From Bigelowiella natans CCMP2755 (lineage: Eukaryota; Protista; Cercozoa), in assembly GCA_000320545.1 (NCBI GenBank), contig ADNK01000342.1:1-64000 (forward strand): a stretch of 64,000 nt of DNA, read 5' to 3'. Both the position numbers and the translations under genes were made by a program. The notes beneath the pieces were generated by a model, which had not been told where the DNA came from, made no database searches, and saw only the letters and a list, made by a program, of their open reading frames with translations. Positions 2,053 to 58,014 of the stretch are shown one piece after another (position 1 is the stretch's first letter; each line of letters begins with the position of its first letter).

Positions 2053-4287
2053 ATGGCATCGTTCACCCGCACCATTCCAAAACGATTTGCTCGCGCTATC
2101 TCCTCACCTGCTCTCCGAATAGGAGTCGGATTCGGCGTGACCGCTACCGCCGCATCGCTCGCAGGGAGTGCATTCGGATTTCCATCGTTTGCCCGTGGCG
2201 AGGAAACAAAGATTATCGTCGGGACTTACACACAAAAGCTAGGCCATGTCGACGGGAAAGGCCGAGGGCTTTACTCGTTTGATCTAGACCCGTATTCAGG
2301 TACTCGTCGCATCTTGTTTGGGGGATTATGAATTTGCGGTTGGAGATGGAAGTGTACGGCGGCGCTTTACATGTGAAAAGCAAGACATCAATGACAAAAC
2401 ACCCTTTCCTTTATCTTCTATCTCTCGCCTGCCTATCAGGAGCGCTTAATTTCGAGTCGACATTCAGTGACGCCGGTGAAAACCCCACATATCTTTGCCG
2501 AAACGGGGACATGCTCTACGTCGTCAATGAGCTGTATGAGGATGATGGCGATGTGACCGTTTATCGAATCGCTACGGACAAAGACTCAGGAAAGCTTACG
2601 CTGGAAAAGGGAAACTCCTGCTCAGCCCTCGGTGGTGGGACATGCCATGTCTCGACCACACCGAACCGGACGTTCGTCGCTGTCGCCAACTACGACGGTA
2701 GTTTCAAGTAAAGGGCGTCGTAGTTTCAAGTAAAGGGATGGGGCGAGATTGAGGAGGAATAACAATCACTACAAAATAGCACAAATGCATTTAAAACAAA
2801 CTGCCTCGACCCAAAAGATAAAGCGTTTTTGCACGATATTCTTATATGCCCCACGTTCACAGGAGGCGAGCGATCGGAGAAGAGAAGCGGCTCAAGCCTC
2901 GCTGTCTATCATCTTCATCCTGACGGAAGAATCGGTGACCTTGCTGCAGCTCTAACGCATAAGGGCAAAGGGACAAACGGAAATCCTGCTCGCCAGGGAG
3001 AACCACACGCTCACATGGCATACGTGGAAGCATGCGGGCCCGATCACAAGGACGGCTACGCGGTGCTCACGCCCGACCTCGGACTAGATCAGGTGTTGAT
3101 TAAGGGAAATCATGATGATGATGATGTGGTGATGATGATGACGCGTTGAAGTGTAATGTACATCGATACATTAACGTCTGTCCGTTCCCGCGTTGGCTCT
3201 CTCCTCCTCACCCCCCGAATTAATCAAGGTCAAGCAGTACTTTCTTTCTCCTAACGGGGTTCTGCTGCCACACCCTGGCCGCGAGTCTGTGTCGCATGCG
3301 GCGGGTTCTGGTCCGCGACACATGGTTATTCATCCGAGTGGAAAATTCGCATATGTTGCCGATGAGCTCACGAGCACCGTCTGTTTGCACAGGTTTGGTT
3401 TGTCCTTTCCCTACCCACCCTCTGTAAACACAGTCAATTAAAACTAACGTAACAGGGGAGAGCATACCATTCGTCATCCCACGCAACAGTTTCTATTCTC
3501 TCCTAATAAATACACGCGCGCGCGCGCGCGCACAAATTGCTTCAGCTACGATTCTGCCGTGGGGACCTTAGGGCCAATAGCGCAACGAATTTCCACCATC
3601 CCAGCTGGATTTGTAAGTCCACACCAATATATTATAAATATCTAATAATCTAGGAAGAAGAGGAAGAGAGGGGAGGGTATTATTAGGCAGTACACGTCAG
3701 CCATTATCTTTTAATGGCAAGCATTTCAGTGGCATCATGTGCATTAATGTCGTCCTTTATGGCTGGTTCTCCATTTGATCAGGTCGATGGCGAAGTGACA
3801 GACAAGGACACGAGCATTGCAGCAATCCGTGCTCACCCTTCGGTAGGTTGGCCTCAAGGATTTCAACAACCGTTTTTGAGGCCCTCTTCTTTGATTTGAC
3901 TGGCATGTGACATTTTCTTGCATCGAATAATGTGTTCACCATATTTATAACCCTTGCCCTATCAAGGGAAAATTCGTTTACGTCAGCAATCGCGTTGTGG
4001 GCGGTGAGGGAATCATCACGGTGTTCCGCGTGGAAGATGAGAGCGGAGAAGCATCCTCGCCATCTCACGGAGGCCGGCTTCAGGCTTCAAGTTACCACAA
4101 GACCGGCGGAGCTACTCCCCGCGATTTCACGCTACTTAAAGACAATGGTTCGCTGATGATTGTGGCCAACCAGGACTCTGATAACCTCGTCACGTTCAAG
4201 GTCAATGGAGAGACTGGCGCTCTGTTACCGACCGGTAAGGTCGCTCATTGCCCCTCGCCCGTCGCCATTGTATCTGTGCCGCAGTGA
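2053..4287 (+). CDS. pgl: 6-phosphogluconolactonase / cycloisomerase-2 family 7-bladed beta-propeller (YbhE/Pgl type), 7 exons, with N-terminal presequence
   Basis: Phase-consistent GT-AG exons 2053-2299, 2440-2697, 2863-3092, 3229-3392, 3546-3612, 3783-3842 and 3967-4287. Motifs include IVGTYT, NPTYL, VANYDGG, RQGEPHAH, PDLGLDQV, GSGPRHMVIHPSGKFAYVADEL, GKFVYVSNR, TPRDF and VANQDSDNL. Confidence 0.92.
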
Positions 4288-28386: not shown

Positions 28387-30864
28387 TGTTTTCAAGAAGT
28401 TAACATTCGTACATCCAATTCCCAACTTCATTCCTAAACGTCAATAAATTTGCTGAAAGGTGCGCAACGAGAAGCTATTGCGCGAGCGCGATCGCGAGAT
28501 GGAGAATCTATTCCAACCGAAGATCTGCAAGACGTCGGCCAAGTATGCCATCAAGGCAAGGGTGGGAAAAGATGTAGTCCATGATCGTTTATACAATGCA
28601 GCACAGGGCAAACGAGATGCACTGATACGCCTTTCAAGGGAGCGAAATTCTAGGAGGGACCTCCTCGGAGTTGCACCACTTGTGCCTGCGACGATCTCCC
28701 CAAAAGTAAAGCGAATAGCCAATAAGCTTCACCACGAAGAAGTGCAATTGAGGAATCTAAAGAGAGAATTGCGGGACCAAAAGCTTCGGAGTGACGACGA
28801 GTTCGCACGCACTGCCATCAAAATGAGAAATCAAAGCATGAAATACCTCATTAGGAAGATATCCCGTGACCTTCGGTAGTACGAACATTCATACAGCTGT
28901 TGATATTAGTAGAAACACGATATCGATGATTAGATTGCCAGTATCCAGCCAAATACCCACAAAACACTTTATTTCTATCAGCTACGCTGCTGAGGAGGTT
29001 TGCCACGAATTCGATCGTTCCTGGGATACGCAAAAGGCTCCAAACATGTCATTTGACTATGAGCAGGTATCAGTTCGTAAAATACGGAGCCGACATTCAT
29101 ACTTACACTAATCTGAATATATGCACAACTGTACCCTGAGAATGTTACAACAAAATATTGTTCTAATTACCTGTAATCTTGTATATTAACGTCGGTTCAA
29201 GATCAACATCGTAATGATTCTCTGACTTAATTGTATGTTTCATCTACACAGGTGGCTCATATCCTCGCGAAATTGGGGTTTCTGGCGACATGGAGAGGAG
29301 AAATGTCCGTAGACCAGGAGAACTGCGCGCGGAGAGTCATTGAATTCATTGACCACAACCAAAGGGGAGATATTTTCCTCAAAGATCTTCGTAAATTCAT
29401 TGCGCAGTTCGTTGTTCACTATAGGTAGGTCTGCTTCAGCAGCATTACATTATGACCGTCATGCTCACCACAGCCATCCCTAGTGTCATTATCATCATTA
29501 TCCAAACGCTGCTGTGCACACAATGTCATTGCCACAATACAACTCTCATCATCACCGTCATCATCCCTCCCCATTATCTTCAGCCTGATGCGGAAACTAG
29601 AAAAATCCGGTCAGTTATCTAACAAGAAGTCAAAGCTAATGAATGAGCTTGCTCCAATAAAAAAAGAGCTGCGGTTCCTTATGGCAAATTACATGTCGAA
29701 TGCGCGTCTAACACGTTGGGCAAAGGCCCAGGAGAAGCGCAACAAAAGAATTGGAAAGAAAGATCTTCCGAAGCCGACCTCTCGCAAGGCGCCAATGAAG
29801 ACAATTATGCAGCACGTGGATCAATTACACAAGAAGAGAATGGGCGTAGAGTTGCGGATATCTGCCTTAGCAAAAGACGTCCAAGCCAAGCAGCTTGCTC
29901 AGTGTACGTTCCAGCCTAAAATCTGCAAAAAGGCAGGATCGCCTGATGTGAGGAAAGTTCACGATCGGTATTGCGTGTGCGTGGGTGGATGCGTCCGTCT
30001 GTTTGAATACGGAGGGGAAGTTGTATGCCTTGTTATTTGTGAGCTGCAATAAAAATCCGCAACAACATATTATCCTAATATTATCTCATAAGTTTGCTCC
30101 TCAACAGATTGCATAAGGACCATAAGGAGAGGCAAGGTCGCTATGATGCTCAGGTCGATCGCCACGTCTCTTCCCGCGAGGAGCAATTCGAAAAACAATG
30201 CACGTTCTCACCCGAGATCCGCAAGGTACCAGAGTCGAGCCAGCAAGGTGCCGTCAAATACGACTCCCATATGGAGAAGACCATCGAGCGCATGCGCAAG
30301 GTTAACATCGAGGGGGGTAAACTCCCAACCAAAAAGTACTTCTCCATCACTCCGAAGAACCACAAGACCTATTCTGGCCTTCCTATCGTACCTAAGGACA
30401 CCAAGCGAGTACACGGTACTACACCGGGGGGTGGAATATCCCGCAAAAAAACAAGCAATGGAATCGCTAGGAAGGATAAGAGTCGTAAAATCTCCTCTCC
30501 CAAGAAAGCAACCGTTAGCAAAAATAGCCCCCTAAACGAAGGCATAAGGTCTTCGAATGAAGAAGTTCTTCTATACCTGGACGTCCAGCTCGCGCCGGAT
30601 ATGAGCGATAGGATTTGCATCCACAAAGGAGACAGTATTGAAGCCATAGCGAAGGACTTTGCCACGAAGCACAATCTAGCTCCAGAGTACCTAGCACTAT
30701 TGCAGAAAACACTCATCGATCAATTAAACGCCTTAGTAGTAGCCAAACAGCAGCACAATGGCAACCATGCCCTTCTTGAGGACACTCCGTTGGGCTCAGG
30801 TGGCGACTTCTATGACGATGATGACATGTCGTCTCTCGTTCCTCGCAGTGGAATTGGGCTGTAG
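26629..30864 (+). CDS. Hypothetical protein: acidic N-terminus, repeated (C)TFxPxI / VHDRL motifs, C-terminal LYLDV..RI....GD....A..F..KH.L domain
   Basis: ORF pieces 26730-27705, 28460-28879, 29483-30052 and 30094-30864 join through GT-AG introns. Motifs are ETFKPKT, NLFQPKI..VHDRLY, CTFQPKI..VHDRLH and CTFSPEI. An 8-aa acidic tandem repeat (DEIxxDE) lies at ~27285-27370. Confidence 0.75.
27851..27917. repeat. Intronic (TC)n microsatellite
   Basis: Directly visible. Confidence 0.95.
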
Positions 30865-30939
30865 ACACGAGAAAACTGTCGTCATTGAGGAGGGGGCGGG
30901 AAAAACAGGGGGTTCATTTGTCCCAATGCACCAAATTGA

Positions 30940-32400
30940 ATTACTTCCAAAATGTTCATCATCATGTCATTTGACAATCGCGTCATGCAATTGCATCATG
31001 CTGGCATGGACGCGCACGCGTGGGTTTCCACAATGGACACAGCAACATGACATGTGCATGCATCACACACATGGTACATTGCATGTCCATCATGAGTGGG
31101 ACACTTGTGATGAACACATGTAGCAATGTGATGTGCATGTTGCGTGCATGACACGTTGCATGTCCATCATCCATGTGCTCATTTGCACAGCTGTGGTCAC
31201 AGCTCTCACACATGATTTGAACGACATGCTGCGCGTGGACAAAGTTCAATCGCAACATGCAATCATTTTCCAGTCAAATCTTCAGCGCATGCTAGCATGG
31301 CCAATTTGAAGTTCATTTCTGGGTTTGCAAGTTGTTGTCACCATCTGTCTAGCTCTGGAGCTACACGTGATGCGTGGCGCTGAGCCATGCGTGCACAGTG
31401 TTTCTTGTTGCAGCTCTGCTTCATTTCGATAACAACAAACCAACAATTGCATGAGTGACCAGGACCAGAGGACGACAGCGTTTTTTCCTTTTGGCAGTTG
31501 GAACTCATGGATTTTGTCAGATTTCCCAGCTCTCGGCCATTGTTTCACAGTGCTTCAACCAAAGACCTCCCACTTCCTGCAGCGCATGCTTCACACCAGC
31601 TGACCCGTGTCAGCCTCCGCCGGATCCGGAGTTCACTTGCATCGCGGTCTTGCTGCGCTTGTGCTGCACGCACCCTGCTGGCCTGCTGAACCCCGCACAC
31701 CAAAAGCAACGATCCAAAAAATCCAAGGCTCGAGATCTGAAACCTGATGAAGACTTTGGAAATGTACGACATTGGCAGTGATGCGGACTCAGACGGGCCA
31801 GCGTGGTCGCCCTCCAGCCCTCCCCCCAGCCGACTGAACTTGGTCTGGACAATGAACAATGAACAATGATGAAAAATCACACTTTCAAAGTGCTGTGAGA
31901 AACTCGCAGTGCACGAAACGCAGTGCTTCGAAGCAACAATGGACATGCAATGTCAGCTTTGGTGAGGACTGACTGGCAAACTGGCGCAGGGTTCGTGCAA
32001 ATTGGCACGATCTAGCGATCTGAGCACTGAGAAACAACACAACTGGCAGCAATGTGGCGACGACGCAAGGCATCCACCCTGAGCAGGAACTTCCTGATGG
32101 CTGTGTTCACACGAAGATCAGCGTTCGGATCATCAGAGGGATCATAGGGGCACCAAACAAAACTCTGGTTTTGGTGGAGTCAGGAGCATCAAAGAACGAA
32201 GAGCATGCAGGCAGGAGAAGCAGGGCCCAGAGCTGCTCTGATGCTCGAGAACGTTTTGTTTCTCACAGCGTTCAAGTGAGCACAATGATGGATCAGGTGG
32301 TTGACATTTTGAACAACTTCTGCATCGCAAAGAGGGCAGATCGAGGAGGAGGGGAACAAGATGGATCACCTTGAATCCTGTCAGGGCTAGAGGGCTCTAG
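30940..32400 (-). mobile_element. Degenerate non-LTR retrotransposon (LINE) 3' relic plus mutated flank; TpA-depleted
   Basis: Minus strand 32260-32345 reads SICPLCDAEVVQNVNHLIHHCAHLNAVR, the CCHC knuckle typical of LINE ORF2 C-termini. After frameshifts it continues RVLFGAP and VNTAIRKFLLRVDALR. Only about 11 TA dinucleotides in 30961-32400. Confidence 0.7.
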
Positions 32401-32568
32401 GGCTGATGGTTGTCGCTGTGCAAAAACGCAAACCATTGAGGATTCGACATCGAAAAGGACGTACGGCTCGAAATTACCAAATTATGGTGCGTTTGTTGTC
32501 ATTGGGGATTCGTTAGCGCGACACATTGACAAGTGTACGAAAGTAATAAATTGTCTTGATTTATCGAG

Positions 32569-35500: not shown

Positions 35501-38500
35501 CTGCACCGTCTCCGATCTCTTGGGGCTGCAATTATGGGTGTTCCGACTTATTACTGCAAAATTGTTTAAGCCTTACACTCTGAACCCCCCCACAAATTAG
35601 AGTCTCAGGAGGAACGCTTAAGTCGAGAGCAAAGAGAGGAGTTTTATAAGGGACTTAGGAAAAACTACGGATACGAGGTTTCTAAGTTCTCAATTACCTA
35701 ATCATTCGTACTTTTTTGAGTTGTCCTACTCATGCATTGTATGTCGTCCCAGGTGTTGGAAATTCCTGGAGACGGAAATTGTCTGTTCCGAACTTTCGCC
35801 CATCAGATATATAATGACCAAGAAAAGTAATAGACTCTTCTTTGCTTAGGATGTAAGTAACAAGTTTTTTTCCTTCTTGCAGGCACATGGATGTTCGTAA
35901 GGAGTGCTGCGATTATCTGGAGAAGGAACAATCCACGTAAGTCCTCTACTACTGTTGCCAATGAGCGATATCATCCCAATATTTGTACAACTACAGATTC
36001 GCTGTCTTCATTCCCGAGGACTTAAAAACATATGTTGGGAAAATGCGGACCAAAAACCAGGTACTACAACGGGTTTGATGGTTGTTTAGTCTTCGATGTG
36101 ATCGTTTGGTATTCGTAGTGGGGTGGCCATGTGGAAATAGCTGTGATGCGAGAGCTCTACAATGTCAATGTGGAAATATATGAGAAGGAAAACATCCTAG
36201 AACCTAGACCCATTGGCGCAGCAGCGGTACGTACATAGCCAATTCATTCCAATCGTCGCCATACTCCTTCAACTAAACTATTGTTTTGTAACTTGGAAAT
36301 GTTTTGCTCGGTCTGAATCTTGTAATTGTCTGATTGGTCGCTAACACTTTGCTTTGCACCGATAAATTAGTCGAACGTAATAATCTAAATTGAGATGAAT
36401 GACTTATACCAAGCTCTGCTCAAGAATAGTACTTTTCTCTGATTTAAATTGTTGTTCCGTATACAGGCTAAGCTTCCCGTTGTGAAACTTGCTTACGAAG
36501 GGAAAAGGCATTACAACTCAATTGTAGATCCTAAAAGAGATTTTCCATTTGGAAACGGCAAAGATAGGGAGGTAAGACCGCAACAAGTAGATATGTTCCT
36601 TCGACTATATTTCATAGTTACTGCCCCCAGCTTTACGAAACGAAAATCCAGCGAATAATATTCAACATACAACAAAATCGATAATTAGGTGAATCTTCGT
36701 AAACTCCGTTTGTCAAGAGAAGGCAAGGAAACCAAAGTGAAGGTAATGCTTACTGTTTAAATTTGGAATTAGGGTAATATCGGTAAGGGTAGCATCGGAG
36801 TGAGCTATCATGGAACATAATTTTTCAGGAGCCGGCACCTAAGCCTATCGTGCGAAAATACTCGGTAATTGCCACAAATTCATCAATTTGTATCGCTTCT
36901 TCACGCTGACATTCCAGTATTTTCAACAGAAGGATACTCTCATGATGAAGAAAGGTCTGCAACGCCAAAACTTGCTCATATCAACATTGAAAACTTTCGC
37001 TTAGACCTTTTCTGACACACAAATCTAATATATTTTGGATGCGAGAAGAAAATACTTAAACTATTGAATAATCTGTAAAAACAGATGACCCTGCCTCAAA
37101 CCTCAATGAATATGACATGCAACGAGCAATTCAAGATTTCATGGATATGGTGAGACTGATGACGATTCGTTGCAGCTGGCCAAGATGACAAAATCAGCTG
37201 ATATAATGTTGTAATTCTACAATATTCTTCAGACGACTTTCGCCGTACCACTGGAAAAGGTAGCGCCGATGGTGAAGTCTATTCTAGAGAAGCTGTTCTT
37301 GAAGAAGGTTAGTTAATACTTTGCCATATTATCTTTGTCAGTTGTTATCGTGTCCACTACTAAGTATTCTTGATTTGCTTATTTGAACTGGATCTCTCAA
37401 ATAGAAAGCAGCCTACAAAGAGCATGAAGAATCTTTAGAGAAGTTGAAGTCAGACATGTTTTTCTCAAATACAATCAAAGAATTTGTTGACGCGCTAACG
37501 CGCTCAAACGAAATTAAGGACGGAGGGTGCGTAGTCCAGATTGCGTCATTTCATACACGACATTCTGATACTTATTTCTATAGGATTCAAGGCCATGGTT
37601 TGATTCAACAATTCCAGGAGAATTTGCTGCCAACTGTCATGTATGCAGCACCTTACGGTTTCAGACTGCAATTTGCTTCAATTGGTCTCAAATATATATA
37701 TATTTGTTGTACAGGTGGAGAATTCGCCAGTGTGTCAATAATATCTCTCCAGGAAAGGTACAAAGACTTGGCATCTGTTTTTCACTTTGTTGATTGATTC
37801 GCACCAATCGCTAGGACGATGGTAAGGAAGGCGGGAAAGGAAACAGTAAGGTGGAAAATAATACCAAAAGATTTTAAGTCCTAAATCCATTGTTTTCTAT
37901 ATCTTATGCTCGACGACATAACACAACGTTTTACACCTTCCAGAGACCAGAGGCGAAGGCTGTTCCCTCTTCGGCGGAGTCTGGAAACTCAGAACCCCCT
38001 GCGAAGGATAAGGTTCAGTTATCAGAATAAGGATAATAATGTTGCAGTCCCTAACATAAAACCACTCTTAAATTTAGAAAAGTGATAACTCAGAAACCCC
38101 TGCGAAAGATAAGGTTCGGTTATCAAAATAACGACAATGTTGCAGTCCTTAACATAAAACCACTCTTAAACTTAGAAAAGTGATACTCCGCCAGTCCAGG
38201 AATCCTTGGAATCATTAACTCCAAAGCAGGTTAATACCTTTTTGGTCCAGAAAGGGCTCGAAAAGGAACTTGCAGATAAGATGGAGGAGATGGAAATTGA
38301 TGGCAAAATTCTTAAAGAGCTCTGCTTGAAAGACCTACTGGACACTGGGATGACACTTGGTCGGGCAAAGACGATAATGAGGACAGTTGATTCTCTCAAA
38401 AATAATTCAGGTACTTATCAAATTTTGGATTATGAGAACCTACGTGCATCTTGGTCTCCTAATACTTAATTACAATCGCCAGAAAATAACAACGCATCTC

Positions 38501-38583
38501 TAAATCCGAACGATACAGACTTGCTATCTCCTAACGCTAATCCAGCAGAAAGTAGCGAAGTCGTTTCAAGCGAAAAGAATTAA
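32569..38583 (+). CDS. OTU-family deubiquitinase with 2 EF-hands, about 3 Tudor/chromo-barrel-like domains and a C-terminal SAM domain; more than 30 short exons
   Basis: EF-hands FQMLDEDGSQ|TINWGEL and FQILDK|NGNGVVYGEEF. Royal-family repeats VAYDGFSDKFNE|WID and YVHYVNWSSR|WDEW. OTU catalytic motifs GDGNCLFR (35768-), WGGHVEI and HYNS (~36508). SAM domain LTPKQVNTFL..EIDGKIL..LLDTGMTLGRAKTI. Stop at 38581-38583. The start is uncertain. Confidence 0.88.
37986..38184 (+). repeat. Tandem ~100-bp duplication covering an exon end plus a whole intron
   Basis: Two near-identical units (aactcaga..cctgcgaa.gataag|gttc.gttatca...taacataaaaccactcttaaa.ttag|aaaagtgata). The introns are 38013-38077 and 38114-38175. 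Confidence 0.9.
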
Positions 38584-38983
38584 GAAAGGCCTACTAGCGA
38601 AAACGATGTAGCAGTAGCGCGACCTGAACCTTAATCCCCAGATTCAATAAAACTCCTTGTGGACTCCATAATTAGTCTGCTACACTGCTGCGGGAAAAAT
38701 TCTGTCATAGCTAGATGGGCAAATTGTGTCTTTTTGAACATGCACTGAATTCATGGCATCATCCGTTAAATTGCACAAAAAAGGGCAGGCCAGTTCATTG
38801 GTGAACGCATGCATGAACTGCACATGCAACTCCTTCAGCACTGCATAAATGAACATGCCATGCAATGTATTTAACAGAGACCCAGACGTGTTGTGTAATT
38901 GCAGGTCAAGCAACTAGCTAGCTAGCTAGAGATGCCAATGACACGCGACTGGCTCCAAAGCTCTGGAGCCACTAGCTAGCTAG

Positions 38984-40140
38984 ACATGATAGACATGCAA
39001 TACACAATATATATAATATATGACAAACGCTGCAGCCGCAGCTTTGCAGCTTTATTGCCACATGTTGGGTAGACACCACGTAATACTACATACATTTACA
39101 TGAGACAGATGCAATGAAATGTTTAAATTTTTTCAATGGTCATCCTGATGTAGCTGTGCAAAGCAGCGGCTACAGCGCTCAAATTGAATCTGTTTGTTTC
39201 CTTGGTCACATGTTGCATGCATGAAAATGCATTGTGATCATGTGATTTGGTCTAGCATGTCGTGCTTTGCGCGCAGCTTTGCGAGTCAATTTTTCTGCGG
39301 TTGTGAGACGCGTAGTTTCATCGTTGCGATCCATGATCGCCGTCAGTTGTTTGTTGATTCTGAGTCTCTGTGGTCCGCATTTCCTGCATTGCAGAATGTG
39401 GTCCATGTCTTGCAATGTGTTGCATGTGTCGCACATTGCTTCCAATTCGATTCTGTGCGTTGTCCTCTGGACAGCAAGAAAGTTCCAAGTGAGGTTGCCA
39501 ACACCACAGATGGCGCGCATCCATGATGTGGCAACACTTGGCAGCTTCAATGTGATTCCTGTTGTGCGAGAGCCAGGCATGAAACCAAGTTTCTTCAAAT
39601 GCATGGCCTTTGTTCCCTCTTGGCACCAGTTCATTTTGAAGTTAGGTGCAGCGGTCTGCATGATCATTTTGCTGTGCATGTTCAATTTCTTTTTCAGTGT
39701 CTTGCTTGTGGCACGTGTTGTGGGGTGTTCCGCTCCAAGCCATTTGGTTGTGATGTGTGCACATGTACACACATGTGAGACGGATGTGATGAAATGTTCA
39801 AATTGTTTCAATGGTCATCCTAATGTAGCTGTGCAATGCAGCGGCTACAGCGCTTAAATTGCATCCATTTGTTTCCTTGGTCACATGGCGCATGCATGAA
39901 AATGCATCCTGTTTTGGTCTAGCATGGCGCGCTTAGCGCGCCATGCTTCCCGACTTGTTTGCTCTGCGATTGTGAGACGCGTGGTCTCATCATTGCGATC
40001 CATGATCGCTGTCAGTTGTTTGTTGATTCTGAGTCGCTGTGGTCCGTATTTCCTGCAATGTGAGACGCGTGGTCTCATCATTGCGATCCATGATCGCTGT
40101 CAGTTGTTTGTTGATTCTGAGTCGCTGTGGTCCGTATTTC

Positions 40141-40187
<47 letters not shown>

Positions 40188-40354
40188 GTATAGCTCCATT
40201 GCACAGCTACATTACCATGACCATTGACAAAAATTGAATATTTCATTACATCCGGCTTCATGTCTATAGTCTATTATACTACATGATCAACCACATTTTC
40301 ATGTCTGCCGCTGGAACATGATAGACATGCAATACACTATATATATATTATGAC
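38984..40354 (-). mobile_element. Composite of 5'-truncated LINE 3' fragments (tandem and inverted copies) bounded by a ~40-bp imperfect direct repeat
   Basis: ORF 39206-39811(-) contains the CCHC knuckle CDTCNTLQDMDHILQCRK(C/Y)GPQR. Copy A spans ~39100-39760 and copy B ~39776-40055. An exact 85-bp duplicate lies at 40059-40143 and an inverted copy at 40185-40262. The direct repeat acatgatagacatgcaatacac.atatatat..(t)atgac occurs at 38984-39024 and 40316-40354. Confidence 0.8.
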
Positions 40355-40588
40355 CCTTTATTTAGGTGAGCGAGAGCTTACAGTGCAGTGGCAAAAATAT
40401 CAGCTTCACATTGCTCTAGTCTAGTGGTGCTAGAGCTACACATCGCTTTATCAGTCGGGATGCACATTAAGGCATATGATTTAATTCGATTTCTACATGT
40501 TCATAATTGACAAAGAACTTAAAATACATCACACGCACAGCAATTGTGTACAAACGCTTATCGATTCAACAAAGCCATGCTTGAGAAT

Positions 40589-56476: not shown

Positions 56477-57055
56477 TTTCAAGTAATTAGAAGTAAACAG
56501 GCGTTCTAGTCGGTACTCACCTCTGGAGTTTGGAAGAAAGAACAAAGTCATCTTCAAGGTCTTATACCCTATCACATTTATATTCTTCTTCTTCTTCTTC
56601 CTTCTCCTCGCAATTAATTTTTTCGTCTTCCTCTTCCTTACTGAAGGGAGAAAATACCTGGTTCCCCAAGGTCCACTGTTGTTCTTCGCGCTTTCGCTGC
56701 GGTCGGTACCTGTAAATGGTGCTTCTTCTCCCTTCGCATCCTCCTCACCCCTCCCCCCTCCGACGCATCTCGGAACGAATTTATAGCGCCTTAGGCTCCG
56801 CGATCCAAACGGTTTGAAGCTAGGATGGCGAATAGAATCGTAGCAGGTTGACCATCCATGCTCTAGTGCAACATTGACACATCGTTGTTGATTCTCCTCA
56901 GCTGATTTTCCTGTTCCTAGAGCTATGATGATGACTGCTGAACCCAGCAAGCATTTATGAAGGGGGTGGCAATGGAAACGATTGTGTGTTGAGGACTTCA
57001 CACCACAACCACGATGATGTGTGCAGTGGGGGGAAGGGGAGGCGCTGCTCGGCAT
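52525..57055 (-). CDS. METTL2: tRNA N3-methylcytidine (m3C32) methyltransferase, METTL2/METTL6/Trm140 family; start uncertain
   Basis: GPWGTR|YLNSDDDVWQFNGWDDV, FFKDRKWILKDFPEI, IFEMGCG|AGSTLIPIL, YYGCDLS, IFVLSAM, LLRPG|GMVLLRDYAEGDLTQFRF, NLYIRGDG|TRAYF and NRKQRKLMHRVMLQGKYVKPR*. Confidence 0.9.
52886..52960. repeat. Intronic (CTA/CCA)n microsatellite
   Basis: Directly visible. Confidence 0.95.
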
Positions 57056-57114
57056 TTGGGCACTCGCAGAAAAAACAGAGGGGATTCATCGGTGAAGACC
57101 TGGTAAAATACTTG

Positions 57115-57940
57115 TCGAATGTGATCAAACCCATCTCACCATCACGTTCAATTTTCATGTCAGAAACATCTGCCACTAGTAGAGATTTCGCAAAGAACTT
57201 TCATCACCAAGACATTGGTGAGACCTTCATTGGAGCATGCAGAGGCAGTGTGGAGTGGAGTCCTTGAGTCCTTTTCTTTCCAATTGATGCATGATGGACG
57301 TCTTCGTCTGGAAGGGGTGCGACAGCTAGTGTGCCGACTTCAAAATCTTGCTGGTCTTCACCAGTCAGTCCTCACTAGAGCTAGTTCGAGGCACTGCCTT
57401 TCGTGCATTGTGCGACTTTGTCTTGAAACACTTTGGAAACGTTGTTTTTCATCATTGTCTTTGTCTTTGCGAGTTCAACCGCAGGGTCCGTGCTCCCACC
57501 AATGCCAACTTGCTTCGCAGCTCGCACACGTCCATCAAACCCGACATCCTCACTACCTTGACACCAGTGTGACCCGTCGCGGCATGATTGTGTGCATGCG
57601 ATGACTGCGCGTGATCAATGCGCATTCGTTGGAAGTCAATCCACATCGTTTTTTGTGCTCAACAATGAGCTTCTTTGTCTTGTTGGACACACATGCACCA
57701 TTCCAATTGAACGTGTTTTTTCAATGGCACGCCTGCTGTGATCAGTGTTGTGTTGGGGTTCATTTAGCTGTCGTTTGTGCGTGCATGTCCATGTGTGTTT
57801 GTGTGCATGTGCGACACGCAGAGTGCACTTGAAATGTGGCCACATGAAATTTCCATTTGCTTTTGTGAGTGTCAAGTTGCGTCATTTGACATGCATGTGT
57901 CTCTTGCGATGGGGATGTGCTAGAACTTGAAGTAGCTAGT
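57115..57940 (+). mobile_element. Degenerate LINE reverse-transcriptase C-terminal relic plus mutated flank; TpA-depleted
   Basis: 57206-57260 reads TKTLVRPSLEHAEAVWSG. This is the conserved LINE ORF2 motif (Y)KTLVRPxLEYAxxVWS with Tyr replaced by His (CAT at 57236-57238). Confidence 0.78.
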
Positions 57941-58014
57941 TTTGTGGGGAGCGAATTCTAAAATGACGATGATGTGATGATGAGTCTTTGTCATTTGTTC
58001 TCATGGAGGATTTC

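What the first reader, a model, noticed from the sequence alone, without database searches (positions are those of the whole stretch)
39100..40262. Candidate repeat-targeted TpA->TpG/CpA hypermutation ('reverse RIP'): sibling LINE copies mutate the same TA in opposite directions
Seen: three copies of one LINE 3' segment differ mostly by transitions at TA sites. The inverted copy reads gatgTAatgaaaTAtt (reverse complement of ~40236-40252), copy A reads gatgCAatgaaaTGtt (~39108) and copy B reads gatgTGatgaaaTGtt (~39783). Other pairs are ccTGatg/ccTAatg, gctCAaa/gctTAaa and ccgCAtt/ccgTAtt (knuckle CRKC vs CRKY). Only about 4 TAs occur in 39181-39780, and the 201-aa ORF has no Tyr and excess Met/His/Cys (TAY->CAY/TGY, ATA->ATG). 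Known: RIP and 5mC deamination create TA or remove CG; they do not erase TA. Inference: a genome-defence process drives A->G (equivalently T->C) at TpA on both strands of repeats, for example through DNA adenine deamination or a thymine/adenine base modification. I do not know of a described system of this type.
Basis: partly seen in the sequence, partly recalled or inferred. Interest (0 to 1): 0.92.

Follow-up and report, generated by a model that had tools for sequence, protein, structure and literature searches.

The report
Known TpA-erasing hypermutation in LINE relics
These are three broken tail pieces of a LINE jumping gene in the alga Bigelowiella natans that carry the scars of a real process turning TA into TG or CA, but a 2026 preprint already reported that process in this species, and most of the TA loss in this piece was inherited from its already eroded parent element.

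Summary
Window 39181-39780 has 4 TA where 38.7 are expected, and the flanks are normal. The quoted sequences are exact.

The element is an endonuclease plus reverse-transcriptase LINE with (TA)n tails. The genome is Bigelowiella natans.

- One copy (L032) differs from near-identical siblings at 69 positions, and 66 of these are TA>TG or TA>CA.
- Old copies have lost 245 of 250 TA sites outside CTA/TAG contexts.
- Of 41 Tyr codons in an intact relative, 38 are His or Cys in a dead copy.
At the fifth (39120) TG is ancestral.

Three corrections:
1. The process is already published (bioRxiv 10.64898/2026.01.13.699255), and this scan found it before on other DNA of this genome.
2. Intact copies are themselves TA-poor in this 3' segment (about 10 TA in 660 nt). 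Copy A newly lost only about 5 sites and copy B about 4.
3. Only 11 of 34 differences between A and B are of the TA type, and "repeat-targeted" is unproven.

Details not in the preprint: CTA/TAG sites resist on both strands, there are no strand runs, the edges coincide with the element's ends, and the 3' ends are hit first.

The parts
39100..39754 (-). LINE copy A. It is a 5'-truncated 3' piece whose sense strand is the minus strand, with its 3' end (…CATCTGTCTCA) at 39100. It has 6 TA where 44 are expected.
   Evidence: At the 11 family sites where TA occurs in >=25% of copies it reads TA 5, CA 3, TG 2, AA 1. The surviving TAs are mostly TAG/CTA.
39206..39811 (-). A 201-codon open frame. It is the relic C-terminal end of LINE ORF2 running on into copy B's tail. 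It stays open because the TA-dependent stop codons are missing. It is not a gene.
   Evidence: 53% aa identity to the last ~165 aa of the intact 1179-aa ORF2; 81% to P0001.
39755..39775 (-). Tail of copy B. It is a former (TA)n run now scrambled into 11 in-register CA/TG/TA units.
   Evidence: Pooled over 86 tails, the in-register units are TA 217, CA 105, TG 101 and CG 3.
39776..40145 (-). LINE copy B. It is 5'-truncated, carries an internal 88-nt tandem duplication (39938-40060 / 40026-40148), and has 8 TA where 22.6 are expected.
   Evidence: At the family TA sites it reads TA 6, TG 2, CA 2. It is 94% identical to the intact environmental copy.
40146..40188 (.). A pure (TA)22 microsatellite between the 5' ends of copy B and the inverted copy. 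It is unmutated.
40193..40257 (+). Inverted 65-nt LINE 3' fragment (copy C). Its TA content is normal (4 observed, 6 expected).
   Evidence: (inverted repeats I1, I2).
38984..39025 (+). Left copy of a ~40-nt direct repeat (its partner is at 40316-40356) that brackets the whole LINE cluster. It is TA-rich and unmutated.
   Evidence: (family D3, 94%).
40316..40356 (+). Right copy of the bracketing direct repeat.

Best explanation
The region is a cluster of three dead, 5'-truncated 3' pieces of an endonuclease plus reverse-transcriptase LINE of Bigelowiella natans. The LINE ends in (TA)n tails. The cluster lies between two convergent genes.

The TA/CA/TG pattern is the footprint of the TpA-specific A:T>G:C hypermutation of foreign DNA already reported for this alga. 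At a TpA step, either the A on the top strand or the A on the bottom strand is changed. This gives TG or CA, after which the site is no longer a target.

Shown here:
- The direction of change and its restriction to TpA.
- Near-complete saturation in old copies.
- Resistance of CTA/TAG contexts, on both strands.
- Independence of neighbouring hits.
- Confinement of the damage to the element.

For this particular 655-nt piece, most of the TA deficit was inherited. The LINE lineage itself, including intact copies, has a TA-poor last 600-740 nt. Copy A lost about 5 further sites, copy B about 4 and copy C none.

Inferred, not shown:
- The chemistry. The preprint proposes adenine deamination by an ADAT-type enzyme. 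A thymine modification fits the data equally well.
- How the element is recognised.
For: Identity of the genome and the element:
- JGI Bigna1 model 68657 is encoded at 100% identity in this genome.
- Pfam finds Exo_endo_phos_2 and RVT_1.
- Copies are 5'-truncated at variable points. The flanks of 30 copies are unrelated to each other.

Polarity of the change:
- L032 has 69 private differences from siblings that are 99.7-100% alike. 41 are TA>TG, 25 are TA>CA and 3 are other.
- Old copies have lost 86-92% of all TA sites against a background divergence of 3-11%. Outside CTA/TAG contexts they have lost 245 of 250.
- The 40 Tyr of the intact ORF become 18 His and 13 Cys in L034, and 15 His and 22 Cys in L035. 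Against P0001, 41 Tyr become 21 His and 17 Cys.
- Intact Tara metagenome copies of the same family read TA at 39112, 39146, 39180 and 39378, where copy A reads CA, TG, CA and CA.
- Scrambled (TA)n tails contain almost no CG (3 of 426 units).

Other properties:
- Runs tests show no strand coordination (z from -1.5 to +1.4).
- Of the surviving TAs in this window's TA-poor islands, 28 of 39 are in TAG/CTA contexts. CTAG accounts for 13 of 39, against 134 of 3898 elsewhere in the window.
- Pooled over 30 loci, TA observed/expected steps from 0.9-1.26 outside the 3' end to 0.05-0.22 inside.

Published measurement: all 231 de novo changes but one in the hypermutable regions were A>G or T>C at TpA.
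Against: - In this 3' segment the polarised excess is modest. Transitions run at 14-23% at TpA positions against 5-9% at other classes, and this rests on only 9 sites.
- No de novo or strain variant at a TA site was seen in this window in the contigs of two DNA runs, so ongoing activity at this locus is not shown.
- Some TA>CA states are shared by subsets of copies at unrelated loci. These arose in source elements, not in place.
- A pure (TA)22 sits untouched between the copies.
Confidence: 0.85

Rival explanations
1. Editing happens before integration. An ADAR/ADAT-like enzyme edits LINE RNA or first-strand cDNA during retrotransposition, so each copy is born mutated and nothing happens afterwards in the chromosome.
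For: - The damage ends exactly at the element's 3' end.
- Sporadic hits in young copies all lie in the last ~1 kb: 16 of 180 sites against 0 of 1618 further 5'. This is what priming from the 3' end could give.
- Some hits are inherited from source elements.
Against: - Both strands are hit about equally, with no strand runs.
- L032 has two separate mutated patches (ref 110-641 and 2770-4156) with 108 untouched TA sites between them. That is not a single 3'-anchored gradient.
- TA loss rises with copy age to 98%.
- The preprint saw the same signature arise in resident, non-retrotransposing viral inserts during culture.
Confidence: 0.08
2. TA is the derived state. Either ordinary CpG decay (CG>TG/CA) or a RIP-like C>T change at CpA/TpG produced the TA/CA/TG mixture.
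For: - CpG-type polymorphism also exists in the family: 35 sites show CG together with TG and/or CA.
- At 39120 and 39313 the TA state is indeed derived.
Against: - None of the 16 three-state sites contains CG, and true CGs are conserved.
- The private changes of L032 run from TA to CA/TG against 5 identical siblings.
- Tyr is lost, not gained.
- TA is depleted, not enriched.
Confidence: 0.02
3. There is no special mutation process. The TA poverty reflects codon usage or selection in the LINE's C-terminal region, inherited by all copies.
For: Intact copies are TA-poor in exactly this segment. Selection on source elements could filter which hits survive.
Against: - Dead full-length copies are TA-free over 3.5 kb (rho 0.04), while intact ones have rho 0.4-1.0 over the same stretch.
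- Non-coding (TA)n tails are scrambled in the same way.
- Other TA-free islands occur in the same window.
Confidence: 0.03

Closest known systems
TpA hypermutation of integrated viral DNA in Bigelowiella natans (Mettrop et al., bioRxiv 10.64898/2026.01.13.699255, 2026)
   Same: - Same species.
- Same signature: only TpA>TpG/CpA, on both strands.
- Same long-term footprint: low rho_TpA with high rho_CpA+TpG.
- The preprint already lists RT and endonuclease-RT domains among TpA-depleted coding sequences.
   Different: - The preprint measured de novo events in one NCLDV insert and one virophage insert. Here the target is a LINE family, and the evidence comes from comparing copies.
- A text search of the preprint finds no mention of retrotransposons, trinucleotide context or CTAG.
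- The CTA/TAG resistance, the lack of strand runs, the edges coinciding with the element's ends and the TA-free 3' ends of intact LINEs were all found here.
Repeat-induced point mutation (RIP) of fungi
   Same: A mutational genome defence that destroys mobile DNA through dinucleotide-specific transitions on both strands, roughly confined to the element.
   Different: - The direction is opposite. RIP makes TpA from CpA/TpG, whereas here TpA is erased.
- RIP needs duplicated DNA and a sexual cycle. Here a single-copy viral insert is hit in clonal culture.
ADAR / ADAT (TadA-type) adenosine deamination
   Same: An A>G outcome with a T/U preferred 5' of the edited base. The preprint proposes ADAT2/ADAT3 homologues as candidates.
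   Different: - Those enzymes act on RNA (ADAR on dsRNA) and give strand-coordinated clusters. Here both DNA strands are hit independently.
- A flanking C/G lowers both outcomes at a site, which suggests recognition of the duplex TpA step. No enzyme was tested.
APOBEC3 editing of retroelements
   Same: A host deaminase inactivating retroelements by hypermutation.
   Different: APOBEC3 causes C>U on minus-strand cDNA, giving G>A on one strand only. That is a different base, strand pattern and context.

Membership tests
B. natans TpA>TpG/CpA hypermutation (Mettrop et al. 2026) | The host is Bigelowiella natans | tested here: met
   EukProt/JGI Bigna1 protein 68657 (P0006) is encoded at 100% identity over 173 aa at G000:C3316. 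The genome is 91.4 Mb.
B. natans TpA>TpG/CpA hypermutation (Mettrop et al. 2026) | The changes are almost only A>G / T>C, and they fall on TpA | tested here: met
   66 of L032's 69 private changes fit. Old copies have lost 245 of 250 non-CTA/TAG TA sites.
B. natans TpA>TpG/CpA hypermutation (Mettrop et al. 2026) | Footprint: rho_TpA <= 0.43 together with rho_CpA+TpG >= 1.52 | tested here: met
   Window 39251-39750 has rho_TA 0.10 and rho_CA+TG 1.74.
B. natans TpA>TpG/CpA hypermutation (Mettrop et al. 2026) | Changes arise de novo in resident DNA at this locus | tested here: inconclusive
   Contigs of two DNA runs match the flanks exactly and show no TA-site variant. The repeat itself is fragmented in those contigs and mixed with other copies.
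Non-LTR retrotransposon (LINE, APE type) | An AP-endonuclease domain and a reverse transcriptase domain in one ORF | tested here: met
   Exo_endo_phos_2 (E = 9e-18) and RVT_1 (E = 7e-18) in the 1179-aa ORF of L031. Window copy A aligns to that ORF's last ~165 aa.
Non-LTR retrotransposon (LINE, APE type) | Variable 5' truncation, a common 3' end with a simple-repeat tail, and dispersed copies | tested here: met
   5' ends fall at many different reference positions. The shared 3' end is followed by (TA)n-type tails. The flanks of different copies are unrelated.
Fungal RIP | C>T at CpA (G>A at TpG), which enriches TpA | tested here: not met
   The direction is the reverse, and TpA is depleted.
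5mC / CpG deamination decay | The ancestral state is CG and CpG is depleted | tested here: not met
   There is no CG at the 16 three-state sites. Intact relatives read TA there. rho_CG is 0.66-0.72.
ADAR-type RNA hyperediting copied back into DNA | Strand-coordinated clusters of A>G on one strand | tested here: not met
   Runs of TG versus CA outcomes match random expectation in six copies.

The most novel reading that the evidence does not exclude
The LINE data point to properties of the B. natans system that the preprint does not describe.
- It recognises the double-stranded TpA step. A flanking C:G pair (CTA/TAG, and most strongly CTAG) protects both strands.
- It hits sites independently of each other.
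- It is delimited by the mobile element's own sequence rather than spreading through chromatin.
- It starts at LINE 3' ends.

Under this reading, LINE lineages that are still intact survive because their last 600-740 nt have already become TA-free. That would indicate homology-guided or small-RNA-guided DNA editing, with an arms race written into the transposon's composition.
Probability: 0.35. Interest if true: 0.65.

Novelty: already known. Interest (0 to 1): 0.35.

Why it matters
A dinucleotide-specific A:T>G:C hypermutation of foreign DNA is unusual among eukaryotic genome defences. Its discovery belongs to the 2026 preprint, not to this finding.

This locus and its family add independent comparative evidence that transposons are major targets. 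They also give constraints for any candidate enzyme. It must act on both strands of DNA at TpA, be inhibited by a flanking C/G, leave CA and TG alone, and respect the element's boundaries.

The family also offers natural dosimeters: (TA)n tails, and near-identical sibling copies such as L032.

There is a practical warning for annotators. Dead elements keep very long open frames because TAA and most TAG codons are erased. Such frames, like the 201-aa one here, are not genes.

Tried and rejected
- Pfam on the 201-aa ORF gave only a sub-threshold DUF6581 hit. The full-length relatives had to be used to classify the element.
- A rare-variant spectrum on the 31-copy alignment was uninformative, because the hypervariable TA sites fail a rarity filter.
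- Using the majority state of the family as ancestor is unsafe, because the copies found are biased towards mutated ones. It was replaced by near-identical siblings and by intact metagenome copies.
- Read laying gave no TA-site variants in this window. RNA reads over the relic come from other copies, so it is not possible to say whether this copy is transcribed.
- Copy number as the trigger was tested. The 5' and middle 550-nt segments both have 16 matches, yet only the 5' one is mutated in L032. This does not support a simple copy-number rule.
- No segmental duplicate pairs usable for an in-place test were found among 30 loci.
- Tet_JBP (PF12851) gave no six-frame hit. This is a weak negative, because introns were ignored and no control genome gave a hit.
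The 3'-first claim therefore rests on one partly mutated full-length copy plus sporadic hits, and those hits may be partly inherited and filtered by selection.

Full report
**What is there.** The window holds a cluster of three pieces of one repeat.
- Copy A is 39100-39754.
- Copy B is 39776-40148 and contains an internal 88-nt tandem duplication.
- A 65-nt inverted piece lies at 40193-40257.
- A pure (TA)22 lies between B and the inverted piece.
- A ~40-nt direct repeat (38984-39025 and 40316-40356) brackets the whole cluster.

RNA contigs show spliced genes on both sides, ending near 38787 (+ strand) and starting near 40485 (- strand). The cluster therefore lies between two convergent genes.

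**Check of the observation.**
- 39181-39780 contains exactly 4 TA where 38.7 are expected (P = 1.6e-12).
- Copy A has 6 TA where 43.9 are expected, with CA+TG at 149 against 83.4.
- The 700-nt flanks are normal.
- The window has two further TA-poor islands, at about 30.9-32.5 kb and 57.0-58.0 kb.
- 'Mostly TA transitions' is overstated for the A/B pair. 11 of 34 differences are of that type.

**Identity.**
- The genome is 91.4 Mb and holds at least 59 scored matches to copy A, out of 1300 candidates.
- Copy A's frame aligns to the C-terminal ~165 aa of 1179-aa ORFs that carry Exo_endo_phos_2 and RVT_1.
- Copies are 5'-truncated at many different points. They sit in unrelated flanks. They end in a shared motif followed by (TA)n-type tails. 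This is an APE-type LINE.
- A cluster mate of a homologue is JGI Bigna1 protein 68657 of Bigelowiella natans. It is encoded at 100% identity in this genome.

**Direction of change.** Four independent polarisations agree.
1. *Near-identical siblings.* A young family has full-length copies that are 99.7-100% alike. One sibling, L032 (G000:C1193), carries 69 private differences: 41 TA>TG, 25 TA>CA and 3 other.
2. *Old copies of the same family.* They have lost 86-92% of TA sites at 3-11% background divergence. Outside CTA/TAG contexts the loss is 245 of 250.
3. *Tyr codons.* The 40 Tyr of the intact ORF read His or Cys in dead copies. Against P0001, an intact 1158-aa ORF of the window's own family, 41 Tyr become 21 His and 17 Cys, with 3 kept, in L034.
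4. *Intact metagenome copies.* Full-length copies of that family from Tara Oceans metagenomes (L059-L061) carry ORF1 plus ORF2. They read TA at 39112, 39146, 39180 and 39378, where copy A reads CA, TG, CA and CA and copy B reads TG, TA, TA and TA.

The CRKY>CRKC reading is also correct. At 39120 TG is ancestral, so the TA there is the derived state.

**What is inherited and what is new in this piece.**
- Intact copies are themselves TA-poor at their 3' ends. The young family has 2 TA in its last ~740 nt of body. The metagenome copies have about 10 TA in their last 660 nt.
- Further 5' both have rho_TA of 0.4-1.05, while dead copies have 0.04 throughout.
- Most of copy A's deficit was therefore inherited from an already eroded source lineage. 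At the 11 family sites where TA is still common, copy A keeps 5 and copy B keeps 6 of 10.
- Some CA states are shared by copies at unrelated loci, so partly mutated sources kept transposing.
- The polarised excess within this segment is only 2-4 fold, on 9 sites.

**Properties that bear on the mechanism.**
- *No second hits.* The (TA)n tails are scrambled into in-register TA/CA/TG units with almost no CG (217/105/101/3). A site is not hit again once it has changed.
- *No strand runs.* TG and CA outcomes alternate as expected by chance in six copies.
- *Context.* Survivors are concentrated in CTA/TAG contexts. In saturated copies 36 of 41 survivors are in such contexts. In this window's islands 28 of 39 are, and CTAG accounts for 13 of 39, against 134 of 3898 elsewhere. 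Both outcomes are reduced at such sites, which suggests recognition of the duplex step. This last point is inference.
- *Edges.* Pooled over 30 loci, TA observed/expected is 0.9-1.26 just outside the 3' end and 0.05-0.22 inside. The bracketing direct repeats and the (TA)22 are untouched.
- *Position.* Sporadic hits in near-identical full-length copies all lie at reference positions 3871 or beyond (16 of 180 sites against 0 of 1618). L032 is mutated at ref 110-641 and 2770-4156 and untouched between them. The sporadic hits may be partly inherited and filtered by selection, so '3' end first' is provisional.
- *Copy number.* Matches number 16, 16, 61+ and about 1300 candidates from 5' to 3'. Copy number does not explain L032's mutated 5' patch.

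**Comparison with what is known.** Mettrop et al. (bioRxiv 10.64898/2026.01.13.699255) ran mutation-accumulation lines of B. natans.
- They found 231 of 302 nuclear point mutations in one NCLDV insert and one virophage insert.
- All but one of those were A>G or T>C, and all of these fell on TpA.
- They found TpA-depleted coding sequences enriched for RT, endonuclease-RT and DDE domains.
- They proposed ADAT2/3-type deamination.

The process is therefore already described. Their text has no retrotransposon-level analysis and no mention of CTAG or of wider sequence context.

Earlier follow-ups of this scan reached the same verdict on other pieces of this genome. I used them as a lead to the species and the paper, and checked both myself.

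RIP, CpG decay and ADAR-type or APOBEC-type editing fail defining tests (see the membership table). A literature search found no other description of a TpA-erasing system.

**Limits.**
- Ongoing mutation at this locus is not shown.
- The chemistry and the targeting are not shown.
- One ADAT1/ADAR-family locus exists, and no Tet_JBP hit was found. Both are only leads.
Majority states were used only inside scripts, to count substitutions.

Noticed in passing
L032 = G000:C1193:59400-65400: This is a full-length LINE copy with a still-open 1179-aa frame, caught part-way through hypermutation. 66 TA sites are changed in two patches (ref 110-641 and 2770-4156), and 108 TA sites between the patches are untouched. 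It could serve as a natural substrate for mapping what guides the process.
   Followed up: partly
L059-L061 (Tara Oceans metagenome contigs, 5.0-5.2 kb): These are intact copies of the window's LINE family, with a 483-aa ORF1 and an 1158-aa ORF2 containing 38-41 Tyr. They assemble as stand-alone contigs from marine metagenomes. The best full-length copy of this family that I scored in the genome itself (L034) is fully hypermutated (3 Tyr).
   Followed up: partly
window 38984-39025 and 40316-40356: A ~40-nt, TA-rich direct repeat (94% identical) brackets the whole LINE cluster. It may be a long target-site duplication of a composite insertion. Its TAs are intact.
   Followed up: no
window 37500-38787 (+ strand): An expressed gene with many very short GT..AG introns (57-94 nt). 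It contains ~100-nt tandem units (37986-38185), so exon-intron modules are repeated.
   Followed up: no
window 30750-32500 and 57000-58000: Two further TA-poor islands (rho_TA 0.04-0.23). Their surviving TAs are mostly CTAG or TAG.
   Followed up: partly
G000:C2414:14438-15741 (+): The only six-frame match to Pfam A_deamin (ADAR/ADAT1-type adenosine deaminase) in the genome. The preprint discusses only ADAT2/3 candidates.
   Followed up: no
LINE tails in L001-L058 (for example L047, L055, and window 39755-39775): The LINE ends in (TA)n. Some tails are pure, with 18 or more TA units in the 36 nt read. Others are scrambled into CA/TG/TA units in register. Copies often sit head-to-tail or inverted next to (TA)n, which suggests insertion into TA microsatellites.
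   Followed up: partly
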